The notes under the pieces were generated by a model, which saw nothing but the letters and a program-made list of their open reading frames with translations, was not told the origin of the DNA and ran no database searches. A DNA stretch of 63,170 bases, counting the filler, from Octopus bimaculoides (Eukaryota): assembly GCF_001194135.2 (NCBI RefSeq). It is 5 parts of 4 records of this genome, joined end to end, with 100 filler letters (N's around TTAATTAATTAA, not from the genome) between each part and the next. Parts side by side here need not be neighbours in the genome. Positions count along the whole stretch, not along the records: positions 30,298 to 44,453 come from NC_068990.1; 4 more parts are not named here. The stretch is one strand, 5' to 3'. Positions 30,198-44,453 of this stretch are shown here, one piece after another. Position 1 is the first letter of the stretch, and the number at the start of each line of letters is the position of its first letter. A program made the translations under genes and the position numbers.

Positions 30198-30479
30198 NNN
30201 NNNNNNNNNNNNNNNNNNNNNNNNNNNNNNNNNNNNNNNNNTTAATTAATTAANNNNNNNNNNNNNNNNNNNNNNNNNNNNNNNNNNNNNNNNNNNNCTT
30301 CATTGTTCTATGTTGGTTTTTGTTTTTGTATACCATTCGATTTAAACCGATTTTCATTGTAATTTTTAATTGCTAAATTTTTATTTTACGTCGATTTTAT
30401 TGTGTAACCATATTTTTATTTGACCCCAAATCAGATGTATTGTCCCCTCTATGTCGCCCCTTGTGGGTAATAAAAAAAC

Positions 30480-31240
30480 TGGTGCCTTCGTTGATGTTTG
30501 TGTGCGTTTTTTACCCTGAAGAGAGAGTTATTACTAGTTTGTGCTCTATTGTGCTCTAAATACGGTGATATACCCCCGAAATGGCCATAGGTGTTCTGTG
30601 TTTGTTATTCCGACCTATATTTGTAATCCATTGTAAATGATGTTAAATTATGGTTTGACTTTACTGATGTTACCTGCTGGATGTTGGTTTAATGTATCGA
30701 CTTGTGTGCCTTGATTTTCTTGGACTTAAATAACGCTGATGGTGAAATATGGATTTTACTTTATTACACATTGGATGTTCTGTTATTATGTCGTCCCGTG
30801 TACTTTGGTATTCCTGTGTATGAATTACGAATTACGAAATTGGATTTTACCTGCTAAATTTGGTCTCATGAGGTAAGTAATGAACTTTCGTACAATTTGA
30901 ACTTAAACTTCTTTTATTAGCTATTAACCTCAACGAATGAGCTATTTTACTACGTTTCCCTATGTATTATTTTTTTCTCTATATTTTTATATATATATAT
31001 ATATTTATTCCACTATATCTGTACCGGTCTATAATATTTTTAATCAACTTTTTAATCGCAGTTTATTTATTTATGTTATTCTATTATATTTTTAATCGAC
31101 TTTATTCCTATGTATAAAAATTTTGACTTCCCTTTGACTTTGGTTTTGTGGTTTATGCTGTACTTCTGATATGTGGTCATTGGTGGGCTGTGGCTTTTTG
31201 AGTCGATGACCTAACGGTTTTATTCTGTAATTAACTTTAT
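30480..31240 (+). mobile_element. Possible decayed Penelope-like terminal region
   Basis: T-rich tail composition similar to 16770-16880 and 53330-53450; very degenerate ctcatgagg...tcg motif at about 30866. Confidence 0.3.
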
Positions 31241-31317
31241 ATATACGTATATACATATATATATATATAAATATATATATATATAGACATATACATATAT
31301 AAACATGCCATATATAC

Positions 31318-31507
31318 AGGCGGTGAGCTGGCAGAAACGTTAGCACGCCGGGCGAAATGATTAGCGGTATTTCGTCTGCCGCTACGTTCTGAGTTCAAAT
31401 TCCCCCGAGGCCGACTTTGCCTTTTATCCTTTCGGGGTCGATTAAATAAGTACCAGTTACGCACTGGAGTCGATGTCTGTCCTTGTTTGTCCCCTCTGTG
31501 TGTAGCT
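31318..31507 (+). mobile_element. tRNA-headed SINE family D
   Basis: aggcggtgagctggcagaaacgttagc head, gagttcaaattcc B box, cctttcggggtcgattaaataagtacc body. Confidence 0.85.
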
Positions 31508-32378
31508 GTGTCCCCTCATGCTGTCACATGAGAATCGAGTGATCTGTTCTAACCGAGTCTTCGTTTGAATATCACTTAAATGCAGAAGGTCATCAAAAAA
31601 AAAAAAAAAGAAGCGAGTGACATTAATTTCTCTTTCCTCGGCAGATACTATCATGTAGCGTTTACATTCCCCTAACAGACTTTTATGTCCTGGATAGTAT
31701 GGCTTTCATTCTGCATATACTGCTTGTAGTTTAATGCAAACGTGGTATTGATGGTTCTGTTTTAGGAATTTCTTACGCTAACGATACTTTTGACTTACCG
31801 TTTGCAATTCGTGTTTAGCAGTAAGAGCATCTTTTGTCGGCATTTCCAGTCTACCTTCAATAATCTAATATAATGTCACAGCTGTGGTTCGTGAATTTAT
31901 TATATATTTCGCATTAAATGATAGTATTCAATTGTCCAATATTTTTTCTGGTTCCATCGATGCTCTTTTGGAGAGAGGTGATCCATTTTGCCTGTGTTTT
32001 TCGTTGCAATTGATCGTTGTTATTCCCACTTGCTGTCCAACTCTAACTACAAAACAATGCAGGACATTCAGTGTCTAACAGTTGAGAATTTCAGTTTGTA
32101 TTAAGTGTTCTTTAGTAACTTGATCGATAGCGGATACCATAAAGATAGTATGTTCTTATAGGTTAATAATCAAGTTTATTCGTGCAAATGATGAAGTTTA
32201 GTCTGAATTTCGCCGAGTTGTTTATATTCATCACTTATTTCTTTTTTGTTAAAAAAATTAAACAGCTACTGCTCTACGTGTAATGACATCAATCTTGTTT
32301 CAGTGTTGTTATTATTGCTGTCACTTAGGTCGTGGTTAGTATTCCTCTTGGTTTCTTCAAAAAAAAAGAATCCACTAG

Positions 32379-33180
32379 TTAGTTTATATTTATATTAAAT
32401 GTGCGTTTTGATAGTCTGTAGAAAGAGCAGCATTTTTTAAAAGGAAGATGGCTATCTGCTGCACTTGTTTCCACCAGCGTATCTGGGTGGGGTGGTGGCG
32501 GTCCGCTCCGGACTTTTAGAGGGGCTGAACTTTTGGGTCTGCTGTAGGCAATACGTGGTGTTTTTGTGGGTCCTGGCGCGGCACACACTCTAGCTACGCT
32601 AGTGCCTGTTTGGCACTGACATGTGAATAACTGAGGTATTTCAAATCCCTTTAGCTCACTCATCATCCTTTTTATGTAACTAACCGAGTTAACTTCCTCA
32701 ACATTTTTGTACTATTCATACAAATCATTATACAATTTTTTAAAAAATCCACCAGAATTTCTCTTGGTAGTTCCGTAACTTGCAGTGGCTAAACCTTGTT
32801 TCCTGTCTTGTCACTGTGTATATAGCACTGATCCGCATAACCAGCTTTAGTTGATTTCCACGACTTGGTTAGTTACTATTATGATCTTCTCTAAAAATGC
32901 ATCGTTGCTTTTATCCGAAGAGAGTCATTTTGTTTTTACCATTCTTGTATTAAATGGCAAAAGTTTTAGGTGATCGTATTCGCAACTACTAAGATAAATA
33001 ATGCCTCCCATTCGGATATGACTGAAATCGACACCATATTTTTTTATGTAAGAGTTTTCTTGAGAGCTAACACTGTCACCTGGTATTTCATTCACCCACA
33101 CCAGTGGACTGCCGTTATTTGGTGCGTGGTTGTTTGTTCGCCCGGAAGGTGTCCATTTATCATCGCTACTAAAAGCACAT
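32379..33180 (-). pseudogene. Pseudogenised ORF of unrecognised family, containing a MITE
   Basis: One frame, no frameshift, four internal stops: CAFSSDDKWTPSGRTNNHAPNNG..VWVNEIP..VSSQENSYIKKYGVDFSHIRMGGIIYL...SYGTTKRNSGGFFKKLY...LFTCQCQ[MITE]AADSHLPFKKCCSFYRL. Confidence 0.55.
32472..32604. mobile_element. 133-bp MITE (hAT-like)
   Basis: Terminal inverted repeats caccagcgtatct / agctacgctagtg; degenerate 8-bp flanks cttgtttc / cctgtttg. Confidence 0.65.
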
Positions 33181-33184
33181 CAAG

Positions 33185-33500
33185 TATGTTAGAAAATGTT
33201 GTGACCGGGTTTAGGAGATCAGCAAGATATTCTCTCCACCTCACGAAGATGTACTTCTTTTCAGACAGAAGGACCTCAAACGATTCCTGATAGTGGGCAT
33301 AGAGGGGTATTTCTTTCTACAAAGTCGGCCGTTGGTCTGACAGAATACTTTATTTGATGATCTGAAGTTGGATTGTAGCTTAATCCCAAAGTCCTCCCAT
33401 GTTTTAACCCTGGACGTCTTTACTGTGATCTCCGACATGAACGTGATAGATTCACTGTCGAGGGCTGTTTGGTAGGAATGAAAAATCAGTAGCGCGAAGA
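33185..33500 (-). mobile_element. RTE LINE fragment (pre-RT linker), inverted relative to the neighbouring 3' piece
   Basis: VKTSRVKTWEDFGIKLQSNFRSSNKVFCQT.GRL and, after a frameshift, RWREYLADLLNPV. Confidence 0.7.
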
Positions 33501-33539
33501 CTGAGACACTTATCCTTTCAAGGAAGCCTGCACAATACA

Positions 33540-34345
33540 CTCTACATGTGAATGAAGTTCCACTGAAGCAGATGGAAAAATTTAAGTATCTCGGGGCCTT
33601 TTTCTCAAGTGACGGAAGGCAGGAGGCTCAGTTAAATGCAATAATTGCATGAACTGGTGCAGTAACGCCGCCAGCTTCAACTTTTGATTATTAGAGGAAG
33701 AGAGGTAGGTGTAAAAACAAACTTGCTATCTTCAATTTGATATAACGGATTACAAGTAAGTTCGCTGCCATCATTTTACGTTAAGAAACTTTCCGCCAGG
33801 AAAGTTTACTGAGAAAATATAAAAATATATCTCTTGTATCTCACCATTAATAGTTAAAAACTATTTTATTGCAGAAAACAAAAACACGGTGAATTGATGA
33901 TGGTGAACTTTCCCTGCGGTGAAATGATGACGATGTAGTCACCGCACATGATTCGTGGTTACCCTTACGATGGTTATGAATCTTGGGTAGTGACCAAAAG
34001 AATACTATCGTGAATACAAGCAGCCGAGATGGAGTCCCTCCGAAAGGATTCCTTGGAGTAGCGTTAGTCAATAGAATATGTAGATCAGAAATCAGAAAGG
34101 GACTCCAGGTAGAGCTGCTATTTCTCCGAATTGAGAGATCACAGCTCCGATACTACGGATGGTAAAACCGACCTACTGGAGACTCAGGGGGTAAACCACA
34201 AGTAAGATGGTTAGACAACATCCATGAGCTCAGTTGGTCCCGTTAGGGGATCCAGCCTGGTTTACTGGAAACGATTATTTCAGAAAGGACCAGATGGAAG
34301 GCGTGCTTGGAGATTTTTACCCATGACTCTCCATGTAGATGAAGA
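33540..34345 (+). mobile_element. RTE LINE 3' portion, interrupted at about 33720-33980
   Basis: LHVNEVPLKQMEKFKYLG..FSSDGRQ; SWVVTKRI...IQAAEM; SEIRKGLQVELLFLRIERSQLRYYG; (gatgaa/tgaaa)n tail. Confidence 0.75.
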
Positions 34346-34369
34346 AGATGAAATGAAATGAGATATTTT

Positions 34370-34729
34370 GACTCGTGTATCTTTTAACTTGTTTCAATCA
34401 TTGGACTACAGCCATGTTGAGGTACCTGTCCGAAGAATCTTAGTCGAACGAATCACCCCCAGTTCTCTCATTTGCCGAATCACTAAGTTATGGAGATGTA
34501 AACACATCAACACCAGTGGAAGGACACAGACACAAAGACGCATACGCCTGCGCATATACGACAGACTTCTTTCAGTTTCCGTTTACCAAATCCACTTACA
34601 AGGATTTGGTCGGCTCAGAGCTATAGTAGAAGACTCTTGCTCAAGGTGTCACGCAGTAGGACTGAACCTGAAACCATGTGCTTGGGAGGTGAACTTCTTA
34701 CCACATTACCACACAATCACGCCTGCGCC
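34370..34729 (-). mobile_element. SINE family A
   Basis: Collinear with 12825-13233. Confidence 0.8.
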
Positions 34730-35296
34730 TATATTATGCTAACTGTCATTCTTATTTGCTTGTTCCAATCGATTCCAATAAATTAATGCATATATCTGTC
34801 CAATAAGAAAGTCTTTAGCTATTCTTTGCTTTGTTTCAAAGAAATTTTTAATCTTTTGAAATACAGAAACGGAAAAGCATGATTTATATTTGATTCACAA
34901 TCCTTGACAAACTGTAAATTCGTTTTTAATTAGTGCAAAATAAATGTTTACTGACTTCCACGAAGTTATTTATAGAGCAGTTTTTTCTCAAAATCTACAT
35001 GAAAGGTTTTCATAAATTTTAGAATTTAAAAAGATTTAAGATACATTTGAAAACGGTAACAATATCTATCTCAGCAGAATAAAATTCCAAACATGATACC
35101 ATCCAACCATGATACCAAGCTGGTGTAATACTTACAGACTGGATTTGTGCGTGCGTGTGCATATACATACATGGATATATGTTTATATATCCGTCTGTGA
35201 GCGTGTGTGTGTATTATGTATGTACGCATACTTATACATATGCATTCACAGACACACACATATATATGTATGTTTGCAAGTATATATTCATATTTA

Positions 35297-35338
<42 letters not shown>

Positions 35339-35341
<3 letters not shown>

Positions 35342-36213
35342 TAGCTGACGTACCCAGTAATTCCTGGGAAAGCGGGGCTTATCCCTTGGTTCCGTTCTCG
35401 TAATTGTTTCACTAATCCAATTACAACAATACAATGTATGTAGCCCTTAAAACGGTTTTTGTGCATTTACAGAGGATACAAAACTGTCTTACACAGGATC
35501 TTATTTTTAGGAATTCCTAATAAGTTATGAATACCCAAATTCTGAAGTCGGTTATTTAATAACATGAAATTAGTTAACCGATGGTAAGAATTCAAATAAA
35601 GTAGCCCTGAAAAGGGCTTTAATGCGTTCCCAGAGTATATAGAACATAGGAGGAAATACTAATAAGTTATGTATACTGAAATCGTGAAGCAGGTTACGTA
35701 GTAACAGGCTAATCAGATAAGAGATAATAATAATTGAAGTAAATAACTCTGAAAAAGGCATTTGTGCGTTCTCAGAGAATATTACCCTCAGGGGCGCTAT
35801 TGTTTGGTATATTCGTGAATAAATCACTAACCGAAATAAATGGATCTATTGTTTAGGAAAATACTGCTTACTTGTTTAAGAGTTGTACTGGATAAATTGT
35901 GAAAATAACTCAAACAGTTCAAATACTAAGAAATAAGCATGCTCAATTTCATCTTTACCAAATAATTTAGGAAAATGAATGGTTATTTCCCTTGATTTTT
36001 AAAATGAAATATATTAGATATATATAAGGATCCTTTCCTGGGGCCCTACTATCGATGTTTTTCAACAATCTGAATATGCCATAAGGTTTCCAGACAGGAG
36101 TTCTACTCACATGTCAAGTTTCATCAAACTCGATACAACGATGTAGGAGGAGGGAGGGGTTAACTAACAACTCCACAAACACAGCCACAGAGAGAATTAC
36201 CCACATGTGTAGT
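35339..36213 (+). mobile_element. Non-autonomous Helitron/Helentron-like element with internal subrepeats
   Basis: Starts tactagctgacgtaccc in a (TA)n tract; ends ...aagtttcatcaaactcg...gtaggaggag...tagtatg; three diverged 140-160 bp internal units (about 35443, 35605, 35747). Confidence 0.5.
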
Positions 36214-36745
36214 ATGTGCCGTGCTCGAGAAGACCCGTCAAGCCAAGTGAAATCGTAGGCGTGGCCGATGTCGGTGTCACATTACTGGCACCCATATCGC
36301 TGGCACGTAAAAAGCATCTTTCGAGCGTTGGGTCTCACGGAGGCAATGTGGCTGATGCCGGTGGCGAGTAACTAGTACCTGTGCCGGTGGCACGTAAAAA
36401 ACGCCTTTCGAACTTTGGGGCTCACGGAGGCAATGATAAATGACCGATACTTTTGGCAATACATCGTGCTTGAGTAGGAGACCAATCAGGTCAAGTGAAA
36501 TCGTAGTCATGGCAGATAATGGTGTCACGCAATTGGCACCCGTGCTAGTGACACGTAAAAGCAGTCATTACACCCTTGGAGTGGTTGGTGTTCGGAGGGG
36601 CATCCAGAAACCATGCCTAATCTGGCTGGAATCTGGTGCAGTCCCTCAGCTTACCAGCCCTGGTCAAACAGTCTAACCAATGCCAGCATGGATAACGGAC
36701 GTTAAATGATGATGATGATGAAGATGATGATGAAGATGATGATGT
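36213..36745 (+). mobile_element. RTE LINE extreme 3' end with internal duplication and (GAT)n tail
   Basis: gccgtgctcgagaagacccgtcaagccaagtga = AVLEKTRQAK*, repeated at about 36464; tail gccagcatggataacggacgttaaatgatgat shared with 57397-57620. Confidence 0.75.
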
Positions 36746-37202
36746 ATGTATGCGTTTGTGTATGTATGTGTGTGAGAGAGAGAGTATATATCTATGTATG
36801 TGCATATACAGGGTGCGATGAGTAAATTCTTGCCATTTTATATTTCTAATTTCACACATATGCGCATTGTTTGTTTTTGATATATATATTGTTGCATTTC
36901 TAGGGTTTTTTTTCTTTTTTTTTTTTTTTGACAGTAACATACACACTATTTGTTCTTCACTCGTTTATTATATTAACTTATGTCCATTGTCTAGAAACCT
37001 TTCGTCATGCATCTTTAGGCTCTTCAGCGACACTTTCCTTTCTCGTGTGTGTTCCTGCACCGCTTAAGCCGTTCTCTTTTTCTATTCGGTCAGAAAAAAA
37101 AAATTACCGTCCCGAAATATAACAAAATATGTTTCAACATACGGTTTCAGGAATTCTGCCACACAAATTCATAAACGTTTGTGTGTGTGTGTGTGTAATA
37201 AA

Positions 37203-37250
<48 letters not shown>

Positions 37251-37253
37251 ATA

Positions 37254-37290
<37 letters not shown>

Positions 37291-37440
37291 NNNNNNNNNN
37301 TGCCTTTTGCATCACTATTCAAAATTTCCACAAATTTCCATTTCCTCAGGTGACAAACTTTTCTAACCAGGTTCAAAAGACATTAAAACACTAAGATAGT
37401 TTCGTTTATTTCATTGGCTTATCTCAGTCATGCATTTAAG

Positions 37441-37713
37441 CATGGGCCTTGAAACAGGGGCTGCAGGGTGTGCAAGTGCACCTCCTAAAATTTTTTGTTG
37501 GCTGTAAAATGAAACATTGCATTCCTACTTACTTCTCTAAGGTTTAGAAAACAGTGCGTACAAAGAAAAAAAGTGATGCGTAAGAAAGAGCTTGTTTCTT
37601 CTCAAAGAACAAAGAACAAAAATAAATGAAACGAAAAGAGATAAGATCTTGTTTGTGTTAAATACTGAACCTAGGTTTGCACCCACTAAGCAAGCTTCGT
37701 TCCCGAGCCAGTG
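37441..37713. mobile_element. About 270-bp MITE
   Basis: Imperfect TIRs catgggccttgaaac / gttcccgagccagtg with subterminal gggtgtgcaa..gcacc and ttgcaccc. Confidence 0.5.
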
Positions 37714-37879
37714 CGCATAAGTTCAATAGAAGAACTGCAGATTAAGGCTGATTATTTCTTATGAAAAATTCGTTAAACAGCGGAAGAAATACTTCCATTT
37801 TTAAGTCACACATTTCTGACTGAATTTTTGTGTTACCAGCATTGAAAACACTAACCCCCAGGTATCGATTATAAATTTC

Positions 37880-38050
37880 ATTGGATTGGTTTGTAAGTCG
37901 AATTCTACCAGCACAGGGTTATGCTTGAAAGCTTTAAAGTTTGCTTGACGAGAGTAATCCTTCTCGAGAATTCTCGAATATTCTAGAAAATTTCAATTAA
38001 CTTCCGGATGACGTGAAAGTCATGGACTTCCGGTTCATCCCTTATATAAA
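37880..38050 (+). promoter_or_regulatory. Heat-shock-type Pol II promoter
   Basis: Two inverted CCAAT (attgg 37880, 37885); HSE array TTCtcGAGaaTTCtcGAAtaTTCtaGAAaaTTT 37961-37993; two ACTTCCGG ETS sites; TGACGT; TATATAAA 38043-38050. Confidence 0.75.
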
Positions 38051-38072
38051 GCGAATGCAATTCTAATTTCGC

Positions 38073-38147
38073 CTTTTGCCTGTCGGTTCTTAGGCGTACG
38101 CATTGAGCCACGCAACTCGCACACACAAACTCGCATGTGGTTGCAAG
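38073..38147 (+). other. Putative non-coding first exon
   Basis: Pyrimidine initiator cCTTTT exactly 30 nt after the TATA T; donor AAG|gtatgt at 38147/38148; YY1-like caagatggcg at about 38284. Confidence 0.5.
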
Positions 38148-38339
38148 GTATGTTCATGTAATATGTTACAAGCGTTTTCTTTCAAACTATTCTTATATGT
38201 TAACGTATTACAACCAGTAATAAATATGTTATGACTTATTATGAACATCTCACAAGTTCTTATTTTTCTTGTCGTTTTACGTTCAAGATGGCGACCCCTC
38301 TTTCTCGCATGCAATTGTAAAATTGTAGGTTGTCACATA

Positions 38340-39262
38340 CTGACATCACCACAATCTTGTTTGCTCTGGTTGATACTGTGAGAGCGGGCAGCAGCCTGCA
38401 GTCAGAGGTCTTACAGGGTCTCATTCCTCACATTATAAACTTTGGTACTTGGTTGTTAATTATTGTGAGAGAAATTCAACATCCAAGTACCTATCGCAAA
38501 ATCCTATCTATCCCTGGCAAGCCCAGTTTTGGGGGTTTGTTCTACTCTCATGTCAATTCCAATTTCTCTGGCATATTTCTCGAACTTGACTGTTAGTGTT
38601 CCGAGTGCCCATACAACTACTGGAATGCTAGACACTCTCCTCATAGTCCACATTCTTGCAATTTCGTCTTTTAGTAGTCTGTACTTTTCAATCTTCTCTA
38701 GTTCTTTGTCATTTATGTGTGCATCCCCAGGTATTGTAATATCTATAAATTTGGTTTCCTTTTTTCCTTTATCTACCACAATAATATCTGGTCTAGGCAC
38801 CTTGTTAGGAGTCATATTGGATTGTAAAATCCCACAGTATCTTATATTCCTTGTTCTCGGTGACTCTTTCTGGTGCATGTTCATACCATTTCCGTGCTCT
38901 GTTCAGGTCATACTTTCCACGTAGACGAATTTGACCACGTTATCGTGCCTCCTTTTGTAATGCTTTTGGCCTGCTTGCTACACTCAATCACAGTATGTGA
39001 GATTGTTTTGTTTCTGCTGCCACACATCCTACAAAGACGTGATTCGCTACTCTTATCTATTTGGAACTTGGTGTAATTATTTCTCGGCCCTTGTTCCTGA
39101 GCGTTGCAATCAATTCCTCAGTGCATCCTTTCAGATCACTTTTTCTTAGCCATTTCCAAGTGTTGATCTTGTCTTTTCCTTCGATTTCTCCGAGGTATTG
39201 TCCATGCAGTGATTTCATTTTCCAATTGCTTACTCTTTCATTTTCATCTTGTTTCTTAAATT
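38340..39262 (-). mobile_element. R4/Dong-like LINE 3' fragment (zinc-knuckle region, RLE, 3'UTR)
   Basis: WKWLRKSDLKGCTE; RPDIIVVDKGKKETKFIDITIPGD...EKIEKYRLLKDEIARMW...PVVVWALG. Confidence 0.9.
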
Positions 39263-39291
39263 TATCATTAAAGTTATTATTATTATTATTT

Positions 39292-39772
39292 TATCGTAAC
39301 ACTGGGTAGGTAAAAATGCACCGGAGTCTTTAGTCGTCTGTCAAGTCACAACACGAACCTCAGACAGATAATACTTTCCTTAAGATGTACGCTGTACCCA
39401 ATAAGGTTGCTTTTTTCAAGACATCTATCTTGCATGGGATTTCCAGTTGCCTTAAGTAGTCTTGAAGTTTCAATAGGATTGATCCCAACGCTCTGATCAA
39501 CACTGGTATCACTTTTAAATAACCCTCTCGCATTCTATGCAGTCTTACCATTTCCACTTTCAACCTCTTTACGCGCAAGATTCATATCATTTGGTATGGT
39601 TACATCAATGATCTGACAGTATTTGTCTCTCTTATTCAATATCACAATATCCAGCCGACGGGTTCATCCATGGTTTCTCCTGATGGTAACCGCAATCCTC
39701 TGCAGGCTACTTTCTTCCCACTTTTCATATTAAGTGCTGAGTATTTTGTAATCCTAAATTCTATACCGATGC
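39292..39772 (-). mobile_element. Internally deleted R4/Dong-like copy (RT end fused to RLE)
   Basis: GIEFRITKYSALNMKSGKKVACRGLRLPSGETM joined to (R)LDIVILNKRDKYCQIIDVTIPND...LKKATLLGTAYILRKVLSV*. Confidence 0.8.
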
Positions 39773-39809
39773 CCCATTATTATTATTATTATTATTATTA
39801 TATATTATT

Positions 39810-40705
39810 TCTTTTTATCACAAGTTTTGTTGGATCTCCTGGAGTCTTACATGCGTGGCAGGTTTGCTACCTGCAATCTACGGTACCATTCTTTTCGGTT
39901 ATCTAATACTTTCCTGATTATTCTGGTTGTGCCAAGGTGGCAAATATTTTGTAACTGGACACTCTATTCCAATTTTCTTTATATTGCCCTTGATGTCTTC
40001 GGATACTGATCCCAAGGACTCACCAATAATTGGTACTATCTTCAGCTTCTTCATTTTCCATAGCTGGGCTATTTCGTACTTAAGAGGGTTGTATTTAACT
40101 ATCTTTTCGCCTTCCTTCTTGACTATTCGTGGGTCAAAGGGCCATATAACATCAACTATATAGCATATGTGGTGCATCTTGTCCACCACTACTGTTATGC
40201 TCTAGCACCTGATCTGTTTGGATTGGAAAATCCCAGAGGATTTTGCTAGTCTCCGACTCAACCACTCTCTGCTGTTTGTCCTCGTACCACGTCTTGCCTC
40301 TCTCTAGCCCCCACAGTTTCCAATGTAACACTTTCGCTACCTAATTGTGTCACCACAACTTGTAGTGGTTTGGGGAAAATCTCGGGCATTCGTTCGTGAT
40401 ATGGGTAGTGGGTTCATCCACTTTATTGCATATACAGCACAGAAGAGACACTTGCTCATTCCTAAAGTTGACCCTACAGTTCGTATCCAAAGCTTGGTCT
40501 TGCGCTGCCAGTATAGGGATCCCAGTCTCTTTTCTTAGTGTTCCTTTCATCAGCCAATCGCACCTATTTTTTCCAGTAACTTCTGTTGTGGCCTCATAGA
40601 ATTGATTATGGAGGCCCTTCTTGCGTAGTTTTTCATGTCCTTTATGCGCTTCTTCCTTTGTTTACCCTTGTTTTCTCTGCTTTCAATACTCCCTCTAACT
40701 GGGGA
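39810..40705 (-). mobile_element. R4/Dong-like LINE 3' fragment
   Basis: KKGLHNQF..WLMKGTLRKETGIPILAAQDQAL..CCICNKVDEPTTHITNEC..ILWDFPIQTD..EGEKIVKYNPLKYEIAQLW. Confidence 0.9.
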
Positions 40706-41206
40706 ACGAGGGCACGTTTCCAAAGGTGAATTATTCAAACCCTGAAGAATTCCTCTCAACACATGGCTATGATGCTCCCCCACTACTTCTGCTCGTGATC
40801 AGAGATGCACATATCGTCAACCACTAAGGCACATGCTCAACTCGTTATGGTTAAACAACTGACAAGCAAATCTGTGGTATTGAGCAGAATATTTGCTACA
40901 GCCCATCTTTTATACCATGACAAAACAATGTACATGTATTGTTATTTATATTTATATTAATATTATTAACGAATAAAAAGTTTTGAATGGTACAACGATG
41001 CCCTATAATACAAAAACTGGACTATATACTTGTTGTAATTTAGTTATCTATAGTCCAATGATATTTCGGAATACAATTCCTTCTTCAGATCTTCTTAGAT
41101 GGAGTCTCTGCTATAAACTGTTTACTAACGGCTTTTCTCCCCCCACCCCCGAAGTGTCTCAGTAGTGGTCTCATTAATATTATTATTATTATTGCTTGTA
41201 TTTCAG

Positions 41207-41256
41207 TCTGTCATCTTCTTAAGGGGCAATTAAATTTGATATTTCTTTGTCGCATG
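41207..41256 (+). other. Candidate 5'UTR / start-codon exon
   Basis: Acceptor attgcttgtatttcag, donor ATG|gtaaat. Confidence 0.3.
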
Positions 41257-41351
41257 GTAAATTAGATATTTATCCACTAACATTATCTGTAATTTGCTTT
41301 AAAATTCAGAGAGGGCAGTTGGAGTATTTTTTTTTCTGAATATTTTGTTAT

Positions 41352-42027
41352 TCTTTTACTTGTTTCATTCATTTGAGTGCAGCCATGCTGGAGCACCACC
41401 TTCAGGGGTTTCTTAATCGAACAAATCGACCCCAGGACTTATTGTTTCTAATACTAGCAATTATTCTATCGGTCTCTTTTGCCGAACCGCCAAGTTACAC
41501 GGATGTAAACACACCAACATCGGTTGTCAAGTGATGGTAGGGGGACAAACACAAAGACACATACACATAAACACACACACTCATACATACAGACAAACAT
41601 GGAGTAGATGGACAAGGACAACTGATGAAGGGAAGTATTCTTTGTTGCATGTCTCGTTTCTCTTTGTTTTTGTTTTTTTTTGTTCAAAAAACAAGTTCGT
41701 TTTCTGTTTTCGTCTATGTTTTCGTTTCTCGTTGTGTTTAACGTGTTTTTGTGATGTCCTGTACCCATATATGCATGTATGTATACATATAGATGTAGGT
41801 ATGTACATATATGTATGGATATATGCATATATTTATATATTATTTATATTATTATATATATCAATATATATATATATATATATATACGACCGTATCCTTT
41901 CAGTTTCCATCTACCAAATCCACTCGCAAGGCTTTGGTCGGCCCGAGACTAATGTAGAAGACACTTAACCAAGGTGCCATGCGGTGGGTCTGAACCCAGA
42001 ACCATGCAGCTGAGAAGCAAGCTTCTT
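41352..42027 (-). mobile_element. SINE family A, interrupted at about 41600-41880
   Basis: Tail half 41352-41600 and head half 41885-42027 are collinear with 12825-13233. Confidence 0.8.
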
Positions 42028-42347
42028 TAATATTTCTACATTATAAACAACAAATTTGTTGCCCAAGGAATCAAGAATTTGTAAAAAGTCTAAGAAATTA
42101 CAGAAAAGGCGTCGCCTGTATACATTTGACATCGATAAAGTTGATTAGGCTGTTTAACAAGACAAAAATGTGGTCAATAAAATACTGAGTTCAGAGCATG
42201 TTGTGTGTTATCTATGCTAATTATGCAACCAGGACCACACCCTCACCCTTGATAGACTAGTTGACCGTACACATTAGTGGGTTAGTAAGAAAATTACTGC
42301 AGACTCTATCGATCATCCATTGTCTATCATACGTCAAGGTGGTCTCA

Positions 42348-42378
<31 letters not shown>

Positions 42379-42413
42379 GTGTGCATGTGTATATATATAT
42401 ATGTGTATGTATG

Positions 42414-42483
<70 letters not shown>

Positions 42484-42484
<1 letters not shown>

Positions 42485-42600
42485 TTTTGTTTTTCCTTGT
42501 TTCTGTCAAATGACTGTGCCCATGCTGGAGCACCACCATAAAGGTTTTTTTGTTGAAGAAATCGACTCCAGGGCTTATTCTTTGTAAGTGTAGCAAGTAT
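42484..42600 (-). mobile_element. SINE family A tail fragment
   Basis: catgctggagcaccacc...aaatcgactccagggcttattctttgtaag. Confidence 0.7.
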
Positions 42601-43532
42601 ATGTTCAGTTTGCCTGTTTACCTTTAAATAGATGCACATCGGCTCATACGTTGTTTTCTACAAGTGGTCACATGACCAGGTAACGTGATGGTTGAGCCTT
42701 TCTGGCTCTCATCCCATCATGTGATAGACCAGCTGAGCACAGGAATTTTATGTCTATCTGCCGGGAGCTCACTATCAGCTATATAAGGAAACTTTTCCCT
42801 CTAATTCTTTAGTGAGGTAAGTTGCGCAGCTGAGTTCGGATCTCAGCAAAGAGCAAGTTTTATTTCACAGGTAGCCTTTGATGTGAACGTCTGTTCTTGC
42901 CTTCCAGTAGAAGTTATGTTTCATATTTGTTACCCTGATCTACACCGCATACATCATGTACCAACTGCATGTAGGTAAACAGATAGATAAGTAGATAGGT
43001 ACCTTGGTAATATGAACAGACAAGCATACACACACATACATACATACACAAAAAAAGACGGAAAACATTACCATATACACACACACACACACACACACAC
43101 TCCACACACAAGCATGAACACAAACACAGGAATATGCAGAATACATACATACAAATATACAAACATGCAAACGCACATATATATATGCATACACACACAC
43201 ATGCATACATACATACATATAGATACATACATATATACATGTGTATACATATGCACACTGATGCACCCACATGAGTACAAAGAAGCAAACAAAAAAGAAC
43301 ACCGCTTTGATAACAGACTGAGTCAACAACTATTGAAGAGGTTACAAGAAGCAACGAAAATTTTAGAAAAAATTAAATAAGTAAATGAATGGAAATTGAA
43401 CTGGTGAGAGTATTAATAATCAGAATGACTCGATTCAGACACAACAAAATTCAACACACGAATTCACATAAAGAATCTTTCAAACCAAATACAAAAACGA
43501 AATACATATATATATATGTATAGATTTAAACA

Positions 43533-43682
43533 CGACGGGCTTCTTTCAGTTACCCTCTACCAAATCCACTCACAAAGCTTTGGTCAAGGCTATATGTAGA
43601 AGACACTTGCCCAAGGTACCACTGATCCTGGAACAATACGATTGTGAAGCAAGCTTCTTATCACAAAGCCATGCCTGCACCT
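43533..43682 (-). mobile_element. SINE family A head fragment
   Basis: cgacgggcttctttcagtt..ctaccaaatccactcacaa..gaagacacttgcccaagg. Confidence 0.75.
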
Positions 43683-43949
43683 ATGTACAAATATACCATA
43701 GAGAGTCATGCATACACACATATCATATAGTGTGTTGTAACCCTAAACCACATGGTCTTGAAACAAGCTCCATAGCTACCCAACCCTGACTGTGACTATT
43801 ACATCTTTATTTATAGTGAAAGTATAGCAAATATGTTGTGGTATTTATATACACCAGCCTTACCTGGAGTCAAATTTGTCTTTTGCTCTTTCATAACAGA
43901 CAAAATAAATACCTGTCATGTATTGGAGTCCAAATAAGTGGATTACGTG

Positions 43950-44225
43950 AAGGCGGGTACTTTAGTGATTAGAGTATTGCACTTACAGTTGCTAGATCAT
44001 GAGTTCGATTCCAGGACCGGGCGGTGTCTTGTGCAAAACACTTCATTTCCCGTTGTTCCAGTCCACTCAGCTGTACATGGGTAACCCTGTGACGGATTAG
44101 CTTTCAGGTTAAGGGGAAATTTTGCCCTCCTCACTAAGCCAGCGGGGTGACCACATACGAAAGTTCAAACAATGTGAAGCGCATTGTGACTAGCAATGTA
44201 TAACAACTGATATTCTGGTTGATAC
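43950..44225 (+). mobile_element. SINE family C
   Basis: gagttcgattccaggaccgggc B box; gtccactcagctg body. Confidence 0.65.
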
Positions 44226-44226
44226 A

Positions 44227-44453
44227 GTGCCCCTGGACTGGCTCATGTGCGGGCGACACATGAAATCTTTCGAGCGAGATCGCTGCCGGTGCCCCTGGGC
44301 TGGCTCTTGTGCGGGTGACACATGAGGTTTTTTCGAGCGAGATCCTTGCCGGTGCCCCTGGACTGGCTCATGTGCGGGTGACGCATGAAATTTTTCGAGC
44401 GGGGTCGTTGCCAGTGCCCCTGGACTGGCTCATGTGCGGGTGACACATGAAAT
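44227..44453 (+). repeat. About 62-bp minisatellite, at least 3.6 units, running into a gap
   Basis: Unit gtgcccctggactggctcatgtgcgggtgacacatgaaatctttcgagcgagatcgctgccg. Confidence 0.9.

What the first reader, a model, noticed from the sequence alone, without database searches (positions are those of the whole stretch)
37880..38300. Textbook heat-shock promoter with no visible gene behind it
Seven in-phase alternating nGAAn units (five perfect), two inverted CCAAT boxes, two ETS sites, a CRE half-site, TATA at -30 from a TCT/TOP-like start, a 75-nt exon with a good donor and a YY1-like motif downstream. This layout is typical of HSC70, HSP90, polyubiquitin or other chaperone genes with a non-coding first exon. 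No such coding sequence appears in the next 25 kb, and three LINE fragments follow immediately. Options are a stress gene with a very long TE-filled first intron or exons hidden in gaps, a heat-induced lncRNA, or a promoter carried by a mobile element.
Basis: partly seen in the sequence, partly recalled or inferred. Interest (0 to 1): 0.72.

Follow-up and report, generated by a model that had tools for sequence, protein, structure and literature searches.

The report
Heat-shock-type promoter, its gene out of view
A 640-base stretch of unique DNA between transposon debris, in what is probably an octopus genome, carries a very convincing heat-shock promoter and a short first exon. The gene it serves is not within the 6.3 kb available downstream, so this is most likely an ordinary stress or chaperone gene start followed by a long intron.

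Summary
- **Heat-shock element:** an uninterrupted seven-unit array at 37961-37993, five units perfect. None appeared in 40 Mb of composition-matched random sequence.
- **Other rare motifs:** two ACTTCCGG octamers (the only two in the piece), flanking TGACGTGA, and CAAGATGGCGAC (YY1-like) at +212.
- **Core promoter:** TATATAAA 30 nt before a C-TTTT start at 38073, and a 75-nt exon ending AAG|GTATGT.
- **Weak parts:** the CCAAT boxes, the CRE half-site and the TATA box are each no more than chance. The "non-coding" exon holds an ATG that stays open to the donor.

The module lies in a roughly 640-bp repeat-free island with the local CpG peak. A SINE fragment bounds it upstream, and three 5'-truncated LINE-like tails, all antisense, follow downstream.

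No HSP70, HSP90, ubiquitin, DNAJ, sHSP or HSP60/10 coding sequence and no Pfam domain occurs on either side. I found no second copy, LTR or transposon hallmark, and no related sequence anywhere.

Best reading (about 0.5): the promoter and first exon of a constitutive, heat-boosted gene with a first intron longer than 6.3 kb. Rivals are a heat-induced non-coding RNA, an orphaned promoter and a transposon-borne promoter. This is a known kind of element, and interest is low to moderate.

The parts
37663..37720 (+). Truncated 3' part of a SINE copy. It marks the upstream edge of the repeat-free island.
   Evidence: It aligns with the 3' part of the SINE copies at 34540, 41868 and 43514 (alignment A2). 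The SINE family is listed (D8, D9, D13).
37880..37889 (-). Two tandem CCAAT pentamers (ATTGGATTGG on the + strand), at -193/-188 from the putative start
   Evidence: The count is not above chance (1.3 expected per 470 bp), so the functional call is an inference.
37961..37993 (.). Heat-shock element array of seven alternating nTTCn/nGAAn units in 5-bp phase (TTC GAG TTC GAA TTC GAA TTT), at -112 to -80
   Evidence: One search is the only such array in the piece. One search gives 0.01 trimeric HSEs expected per 470 bp. One search found 0 in 40 Mb of simulated sequence.
38000..38033 (-). ETS-CRE-ETS module: ACTTCCGG (38000) - ATGACGTGAAAGTCAT - GG - ACTTCCGG (38026). TGACGTGA is at 38009-38016.
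   Evidence: these are the only two ACTTCCGG octamers in 14 kb (0.17 expected).
38043..38050 (+). TATA box TATATAAA, with its first T at -30
   Evidence: The motif is common in this AT-rich DNA, so the evidence is its position relative to the HSE, the start and the exon.
38073..38147 (+). Putative first exon, 75 nt. It starts C-TTTT (TOP/TCT-like, 6 of 8 consensus positions), contains an ATG at 38135, and ends AAG before GTATGT.
   Evidence: (AGGTATGT: 0.02 expected per 470 bp). The start site and the splicing are predicted, not observed.
38148..38355 (+). Unique start of the putative intron. It holds AATAAA at 38219-38224 and the YY1-like CAAGATGGCGAC at 38284-38295 (+212).
   Evidence: Alignment with L004 shows that the LINE-like homology stops at about 38356-38366, so the YY1-like motif is outside the repeat.
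38356..39300 (-). LINE-like 3' fragment 1 (5'-truncated), antisense to the promoter
   Evidence: ORF tail 38507-38902(-) has 32 homologues. L004 is 75% identical in DNA to 38366-38734. ORF 38911-39117(-) has a weak zf-RVT hit.
39330..39775 (-). LINE-like 3' fragment 2, antisense
   Evidence: The tail peptide is 34% identical to fragment 1, E = 8e-17. The outer boundaries are approximate.
39776..40800 (-). LINE-like 3' fragment 3, antisense, ending in an (AAT)n tail at 39776-39809
   Evidence: The tail is 36% identical to fragment 1, E = 2e-15. It has a weak zf-RVT hit, E = 0.0026.

Best explanation
This is the promoter and short first exon of a gene transcribed by RNA polymerase II on the + strand.

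**Proposed mechanism (inferred).**
- Under proteotoxic or heat stress, trimeric heat-shock factor binds the seven-unit HSE array at -112 to -80.
- It boosts initiation from a TATA-directed start at about 38073.
- Between the HSE and the TATA box, an ETS-CRE-ETS module gives basal, housekeeping-type activity. A YY1-like site early in the intron may add to this.
- The 75-nt exon is spliced from the donor at 38147/38148 to an exon more than 6.3 kb downstream, beyond the end of the piece, across an intron filled with antisense LINE-like tails, SINEs and microsatellites.

**Likely gene class.** Combining strong HSE and TATA elements with housekeeping motifs points to a constitutively expressed, heat-boostable proteostasis gene, such as a cognate chaperone, a co-chaperone or a ubiquitin-system component. 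Its identity is unknown.

**Shown versus inferred.** Shown: the motifs, their rarity, their order and spacing, the repeat-free island, the CpG peak, and the absence of coding sequence nearby. Inferred: HSF binding, the start site, the splicing, the existence of downstream exons, and the host (probably an octopod).
For: - **HSE rarity and position:** the array is far beyond chance and correctly placed upstream of a TATA box.
- **Other rare motifs:** two ACTTCCGG octamers and the YY1-like 9-mer are each rare (0.17 and 0.03 expected in the piece) and cluster within 300 bp of the HSE.
- **Geometry:** TATA at -30, pyrimidine start, 75-nt exon and AAG|GTATGT donor form a coherent layout.
- **Repeat-free island:** the module occupies about 640 bp (37720-38355) bounded by a SINE fragment and a LINE-like 3' end. 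This is expected if insertions there are selected against.
- **CpG:** observed/expected is 1.34-1.44 over 37898-38297, against 0.73 for the piece and about 0.3 just downstream.
- **Repeat orientation:** all three LINE-like tails that follow are antisense to the putative transcript. By general knowledge, this is the orientation tolerated in introns.
- **Host:** the repeat families match what I recall from Octopus genomes, which are large and repeat-rich, so long introns would not be unusual.
Against: - No coding exon of any recognisable family lies in the 6.3 kb downstream, or in the 7.6 kb upstream on the other strand.
- By established knowledge, classical strongly heat-induced genes have no introns or short ones, because splicing is impaired by heat. 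A first intron longer than 6.3 kb is atypical for them.
- The exon carries an ATG in poor context (a uORF or a 4-codon coding start).
- An AATAAA lies 72 nt into the putative intron.
- The CCAAT boxes are too far upstream to count for much.
- No transcript, conservation or copy-number evidence could be obtained.
Confidence: 0.5

Rival explanations
1. The promoter is real and responds to HSF, but its product is a non-coding RNA. This could be a heat-induced lncRNA, spliced or ending at the AATAAA at 38219, or transcription running through the antisense LINE-like tails. Alternatively the site is an HSF-bound enhancer that makes unstable RNA.
For: The promoter evidence is the same as for the best explanation. 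The unspliced RNA has only tiny ORFs (MWLQGMFM*, at most 46 aa before the repeats) and meets AATAAA after about 150 nt. No coding domain lies anywhere in the piece. Heat shock is known to induce many non-coding and transposon-associated transcripts in C. elegans (PMC6765114, found).
Against: The consensus donor at the end of a 75-nt exon and the housekeeping motif set are more typical of mRNA genes. Absence of coding sequence in 6.3 kb is weak evidence in a genome with long introns.
Confidence: 0.2
2. This is an orphaned promoter. It once drove a stress gene whose body was separated or lost through transposon insertions, rearrangement or an assembly misjoin. It is now silent or drives nothing useful.
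For: No gene follows. Repeats begin only 210 nt after the donor. The region is extremely repeat-rich, with an assembly gap nearby.
Against: The motifs are intact, with 5 perfect HSE units, two identical ETS octamers and a perfect TATA. CpGs are preserved. A decaying relic would be expected to erode. There is no gap between the promoter and the repeats.
Confidence: 0.1
3. The promoter is carried by a mobile element, either an LTR or a Helitron-like HSE carrier.
For: The order TATA (38043) - AATAAA (38219) - ...GTTCA (38283) - TGGCGACC (38289) formally resembles U3-R-U5-PBS. Transposon-borne HSEs are known from Helitrons in Caenorhabditis (PMC6927752).
Against: - There is no second copy in 14 kb and no gag/pol or any other domain downstream.
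- The 'PBS' does not extend into a tRNA T-arm-like sequence (my inspection).
- The only matching TGAAC start lies inside a SINE fragment.
- A six-frame probe of the island found nothing in 5.8 billion proteins, whereas the adjacent LINE-like tail found 32.
Confidence: 0.07
4. The HSE serves a gene on the minus strand, alone or as a bidirectional promoter. On that strand the order is HSE, then CCAAT-CCAAT (37889-37880), then TTTATAAT (37879-37872).
For: HSEs work in either orientation. The CCAAT boxes are in forward orientation on the minus strand and lie next to a TATA-like element.
Against: The TATA-like element is weak and abuts the CCAAT boxes. There is no consensus donor and no coding domain on the minus strand in 7.6 kb. 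The rare ETS and YY1-like motifs and the strong TATA all lie on the + side.
Confidence: 0.05
5. This is a chance cluster of motifs in AT-rich, low-complexity DNA.
For: TATA, CCAAT and TGACG are each at chance level.
Against: No 7-unit array occurred in 40 Mb of matched random sequence. Two further rare motifs co-locate in correct promoter order.
Confidence: 0.03

Closest known systems
Classical HSF-driven heat-shock promoters (Drosophila hsp70 and hsp83, human HSPA1A)
   Same: A contiguous array of inverted nGAAn units within about 120 bp upstream of a TATA-directed start. The single long uninterrupted array resembles hsp83 in particular (my knowledge of the literature, not tested here).
   Different: In those genes the chaperone coding sequence follows within about 0.2-1.5 kb. 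Here none follows within 6.3 kb.
HSC70 (HSPA8) and HSP90 (Hsp83/HSP90AB1) genes with a short non-coding first exon and a 5'-UTR intron
   Same: A short first exon of about 75 nt, a TATA box, an HSE, inverted CCAAT boxes and a pyrimidine-rich start. The motif mix suggests constitutive plus inducible expression.
   Different: No HSP70 or HSP90 exon is present. The intron would be several times longer than in the known examples, no intronic snoRNA was found, and exon 1 contains an ATG.
Human polyubiquitin UBC
   Same: HSEs in the promoter (PMC4552642), a non-coding first exon, and YY1 sites in the 5'-UTR intron that enhance expression (PMC3680475).
   Different: The UBC intron is under 1 kb and is followed by ubiquitin repeats. 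No ubiquitin coding sequence was found here.
Transposon-borne heat-shock elements (Helitrons in Caenorhabditis, PMC6927752; ONSEN LTRs in Arabidopsis, from my own knowledge)
   Same: An HSE array embedded in a transposon-rich landscape with no chaperone gene beside it.
   Different: The HSE lies in the one repeat-free island of the locus. No transposon hallmarks or extra copies were detected.
Heat-induced non-coding RNAs (Drosophila hsr-omega; C. elegans heat-shock ncRNAs, PMC6765114)
   Same: An HSF-type promoter with no protein-coding potential in the nearby transcript.
   Different: No transcript evidence exists here, and the short exon with a consensus donor looks like an mRNA 5' end.

Membership tests
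HSF-dependent heat-shock promoter | At least three contiguous inverted nGAAn units in 5-bp phase | tested here: met
   Seven units, five of them perfect, at 37961-37993. None occurred in 40 Mb of matched random sequence.
HSF-dependent heat-shock promoter | The HSE lies proximal to a core promoter (TATA or initiator) on the same DNA | tested here: met
   TATATAAA at 38043 lies 50 bp after the array, and a C-TTTT start lies 30 nt further on. The start site itself is only predicted.
HSF-dependent heat-shock promoter | HSF binding and heat-inducible transcription | not testable with these tools
   No expression or binding data were reachable.
HSF-dependent heat-shock promoter | A stress or chaperone gene downstream | tested here: inconclusive
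   There is no HSP70/90/60/10/40, sHSP or ubiquitin by tblastn and no Pfam domain in 6.3 kb. The piece ends at 44453.
HSC70/HSP90/polyubiquitin-type gene start (non-coding exon 1 plus 5'-UTR intron) | A short first exon ending in a consensus donor | tested here: met
   Exon 38073-38147 (75 nt), AAG|GTATGT. This is predicted only.
HSC70/HSP90/polyubiquitin-type gene start (non-coding exon 1 plus 5'-UTR intron) | Exon 1 has no start codon | tested here: not met
   An ATG at 38135 is in a frame open to the donor. It may be a uORF or a real start.
HSC70/HSP90/polyubiquitin-type gene start (non-coding exon 1 plus 5'-UTR intron) | HSP70, HSP90 or ubiquitin coding exons after a short (about 1-2 kb or less) intron | tested here: not met
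   none in 6.3 kb.
Transposon-borne promoter (LTR or Helitron) | Multiple copies | tested here: inconclusive
   There is a single copy in the 14-kb piece. The six-frame probe of the island gave no hit, against 32 for the LINE-like tail. The source genome could not be searched.
Transposon-borne promoter (LTR or Helitron) | Structural hallmarks (paired LTRs, TSD, tRNA-complementary PBS, gag/pol, or Helitron termini) | tested here: not met
   plus inspection of 38283-38310.
Heat-induced lncRNA | A transcript lacking coding potential | tested here: inconclusive
   The unspliced RNA has no ORF longer than 46 aa before the repeats. The spliced product is unknown.

The most novel reading that the evidence does not exclude
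The promoter serves no protein-coding gene. Instead it drives stress-induced transcription straight through three antisense LINE-like tails. The product would be a heat-inducible non-coding RNA, or antisense transposon RNA, in a cephalopod. Such RNA could, for example, feed small-RNA silencing when stress loosens transposon control.
Probability: 0.12. Interest if true: 0.55.

Novelty: new member of a known kind. Interest (0 to 1): 0.25.

Why it matters
If confirmed, this would be a cleanly defined, compact (about 200 bp) heat-inducible promoter from a cephalopod. That could be a useful tool for inducible transgenes in an emerging model group, and a marker for annotating a stress gene whose first exon is easily missed because it sits far from the coding exons. 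Biologically it is what one expects of a heat-shock or cognate chaperone gene. Only the non-coding or antisense-transposon reading would add something new.

Tried and rejected
1. **tblastn for heat-shock proteins.** Only noise came back, E above 1.
2. **Pfam.** I scanned all stop-to-stop ORFs of 40 aa or more on the + strand 38012-44453 and on the minus strand 30298-37992. There were 0 families. My first attempts with raw ranges failed on stop codons.
3. **Rfam and tRNA scans.** These gave only sub-threshold miRNA hits on TA/CA microsatellites, with no snoRNA or tRNA.
4. **Extending the locus by exact protein look-up.** One search was largely mis-specified by me: the minus-strand ranges included the stop codon and lost the start codon, and TTG/GTG starts were not read as M. 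I redid it correctly, and none of the 10 ORFs is in the collection.
5. **Identifying the host through LINE homologues.** The hits are unnamed ENA and Logan contigs. A literature search for the run accession found nothing.
6. **JGI metagenome scan with the 21-nt HSE core.** The two hits are chance matches inside prokaryotic coding sequence.
8. **Six-frame 'handle' query over 37730-38378.** This was meant to find paralogous or orthologous copies, or run-off transcript ORFs. There was no hit at E of 10 or less.
9. **LTR reading.** The order TATA-AATAAA-CA-TGGCGACC looked LTR-like, but I rejected this (see the rival explanations).
10. **Literature searches.** Searches for octopus heat-shock promoters or HSP70 gene structure found nothing usable.

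Full report
**Scope.** Only window 30298-44453 (14,156 bases, 37.7% G+C) is genome. It contains one 10-N gap, at 37291-37300, inside a (TA)n run.

- **HSE array:** TTC-GAG-TTC-GAA-TTC-GAA-TTT at 37961-37993, in strict 5-bp phase. That is seven units, five of them perfect.
- **CCAAT:** ATTGGATTGG at 37880-37889.
- **ETS-like sites:** ACTTCCGG at 38000 and again at 38026, flanking ATGACGTGAAAGTCAT, which contains TGACGTGA at 38009.
- **TATA box:** TATATAAA at 38043-38050.
- **Start:** a C followed by TTTT at 38073, 30 nt after the first T of the TATA box.
- **Donor:** AAG|GTATGT, with the exon ending at 38147. The exon is therefore 75 nt.
- **YY1-like site:** CAAGATGGCGAC at 38284-38295.

The statistics separate strong evidence from weak.
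- Trimeric HSEs are expected 0.01 times per 470 bp.
- The ACTTCCGG octamer is expected 0.17 times in the whole piece, and the only two copies are here.
- AAGATGGCG is expected 0.03 times in the piece.
- CCAAT (1.3 per 470 bp), TGACG (0.5) and TATA-type octamers are at chance level taken alone.
- In 40 Mb of first-order Markov sequence with this composition, no seven-unit array of this quality appeared. Four contiguous perfect units occurred 8 times, which is 0.003 per piece.

The core of the observation (HSE, paired ETS sites, YY1-like site, correct order and spacing) is therefore far beyond chance. The CCAAT boxes, CRE half-site and TATA box are supported only by their position.

Two points need correcting. 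The exon contains an ATG at 38135 whose frame is open to the donor (MWLQ plus 1 nt), so it may be a uORF or a real start. And the CCAAT boxes sit at -190, further upstream than usual.

**2. What surrounds it?** The piece is mostly repeats.
- **SINEs:** copies lie on the + strand at about 34540-34700, 41868-42030 and 43514-43660 (families D8, D9, D13). A truncated 3' part lies at about 37663-37720.
- **Other repeats:** a G+C-rich composite repeat ending in (GAT)n spans 36200-36745, and related 62-bp tandem units lie at 44227-44453. TA/CA microsatellites are numerous.
- **LINE-like tails:** immediately downstream of the promoter lie three 5'-truncated tails of retrotransposon ORFs, all on the minus strand, at about 38356-39300, 39330-39775 and 39776-40800.
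  - They are mutually homologous (34-36% identity, E = 2e-15 and 8e-17).
  - Two give weak zf-RVT matches below Pfam's cut-off.
  - The first has 32 homologues in large unnamed eukaryote-sized contigs.
  - A Logan contig (L004) is 75% identical in DNA to 38366-38734, and the homology stops at about 38356-38366.

The promoter, exon and first 210 nt of the putative intron, including the YY1-like site, thus form a repeat-free island of about 640 bp (37720-38355). CpG observed/expected peaks there, at 1.34-1.44 over 37898-38297, against 0.73 for the piece and about 0.3 just downstream.

**Host.** A SINE core that I remembered from Octopus sequences (GGTGCCACGCAGTGGGACTGAACC) matches two places with 2-3 mismatches, against 0 expected. 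The 36.2-36.75 kb repeat also matches my recollection of an abundant Octopus element. The host is therefore probably an octopod. This rests on memory and could not be verified with the tools.

**3. Is there a gene?** Not in view.
- tblastn with HSP70, HSP90, ubiquitin, DNAJ, sHSP, HSP10 and HSP60 found nothing.
- Pfam found no family in any ORF of 40 aa or more on the + strand from 38012 to 44453, nor on the minus strand from 30298 to 37992.
- Rfam and ARAGORN found no snoRNA or tRNA. All Rfam hits are microsatellite artefacts below gathering scores.
- The unspliced RNA from 38073 would encode only MWLQGMFM* and other ORFs of 46 aa or fewer before the repeats. It would meet an AATAAA at 38219.
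- No gap lies downstream in which exons could hide.

**4. Attempts to reach related sequence.** All failed, and these are the main limits of this report.
- Exact look-up of window ORFs found nothing. One search was mis-specified by me; one search is the valid test.
- A 21-nt HSE-core scan of JGI metagenomes hit only prokaryotic coding sequence by chance.
- A human HSPA8 query returned only distant taxa in its top 120 hits, so octopod chaperone loci could not be fetched.
- A composite six-frame query covering 37730-38378 found nothing at E of 10 or less among 5.8 billion proteins. The neighbouring LINE-like tail had found 32 hits. This is a weak argument that the island is not a multi-copy element.

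**5. How it most likely works.** The grammar is that of an HSF-responsive Pol II promoter, with these positions relative to the putative start.

| Element | Position |
|---|---|
| HSE array | -112 to -80 |
| ETS sites | -73 and -47 |
| CRE-like site | -64 |
| TATA box | -30 |
| Pyrimidine start | +1 |
| Donor | +75 |
| YY1-like site | +212, in the intron |

- The ETS, CRE-like and YY1-like set is typical of constitutively active promoters. The strong HSE and TATA are typical of inducible ones.
- I therefore infer a gene with basal expression that is boosted by stress.
- Its first exon would be spliced across an intron longer than 6.3 kb and full of repeats.
- The island structure, the CpG peak and the antisense orientation of the LINE-like tails fit this reading.
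- Against it, classical heat-induced genes avoid long introns, and no transcript or conservation evidence exists.
- I put this reading at about 0.5.

Rivals and their weights:

| Reading | Confidence |
|---|---|
| Heat-induced non-coding RNA or enhancer | 0.2 |
| Orphaned promoter | 0.1 |
| Transposon-borne promoter | 0.07 |
| Minus-strand or bidirectional use | 0.05 |
| Chance | 0.03 |

On the transposon-borne reading, the order TATA-AATAAA-CA-TGGCGACC is formally LTR-like. However, there is no second LTR, no gag/pol and no tRNA-like PBS extension, and the only matching terminus lies in a SINE fragment.

**6. Comparison with what is known.**
- It works like the Drosophila hsp83/hsp70 and human HSPA1A promoters (my knowledge).
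- It is laid out like HSC70, HSP90 or UBC gene starts. UBC has promoter HSEs (PMC4552642) and intronic YY1 sites that enhance expression (PMC3680475; both found).
- Membership of those gene families fails the decisive test, because their coding exons are absent and the intron would be much too long.
- Transposon-borne HSEs (Helitrons, PMC6927752) and heat-induced non-coding RNAs (PMC6765114) remain as analogies for the rival readings.

**7. Verdict.** This is a new member of a known kind, a heat-shock-type promoter. The gene is simply not in the DNA provided. Interest is low to moderate (0.25). It would rise only if the transcript proves to be a stress-induced non-coding or antisense-transposon RNA.

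Noticed in passing
window 36200-36745 and 43940-44453: A G+C-rich composite repeat has internal 87-bp and 248-bp repeats and ends in (GAT/ATG)n. Related 62-bp tandem units (3.6 copies) lie at 44227-44453, preceded by a tRNA-like B-box region (gagttcgattcc, about 44000). It looks like the abundant SINE-like element I recall from Octopus.
   Followed up: partly
window 34540-34700, 41868-42030, 43514-43660, 37663-37720: There are three + strand copies and one truncated copy of a SINE, each preceded by a TA-rich microsatellite. A remembered octopod SINE core matches two of them with 2-3 mismatches.
   Followed up: partly
window 38000-38033: The two ACTTCCGG octamers are direct repeats 26 bp apart. 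They flank a small palindrome (ATGAC-GTGAAA-GTCAT) that contains the CRE-like TGACGTGA. This looks like a compact ETS-CRE-ETS module rather than independent sites.
   Followed up: no
window 37781-37796: A further inverted pair of ETS-like cores (CGGAAG...ACTTCC) lies about 290 nt upstream of the putative start.
   Followed up: no
window 38043-38296: The order TATA - AATAAA (38219) - GTTCA (38283) - TGGCGACC (38289) mimics the U3-R-U5-PBS layout of an LTR. I checked this reading and did not accept it.
   Followed up: yes
window 37291-37300: A 10-N assembly gap lies inside a (TA)n run, 780 nt upstream of the putative start. It is the only gap in the piece.
   Followed up: yes
window 33200-34200: Fragments resembling the end of a reverse-transcriptase domain lie on the + strand (for example KISSAKTETLILSRK...FKYLG at 33482-33649). 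They gave no Pfam hit, so this is probably another decayed LINE.
   Followed up: partly
window 35509-35782: A 142-bp unit is tandemly duplicated (1.9 copies, 75% match). Its nature is unknown.
   Followed up: no
window 31240-31320, 35190-35350, 41760-41840, 42340-42430, 43150-43260: Rfam 'miRNA' matches (mir-297, mir-3149, mir-1277 and others) all lie on TA/CA microsatellites and are far below gathering scores. They are artefacts.
   Followed up: yes
L005 1850-1870, L006 2439-2459: The 21-nt HSE core occurs by chance inside a coding sequence on two near-identical, prokaryote-like JGI metagenome contigs. They are unrelated to the finding.
   Followed up: yes
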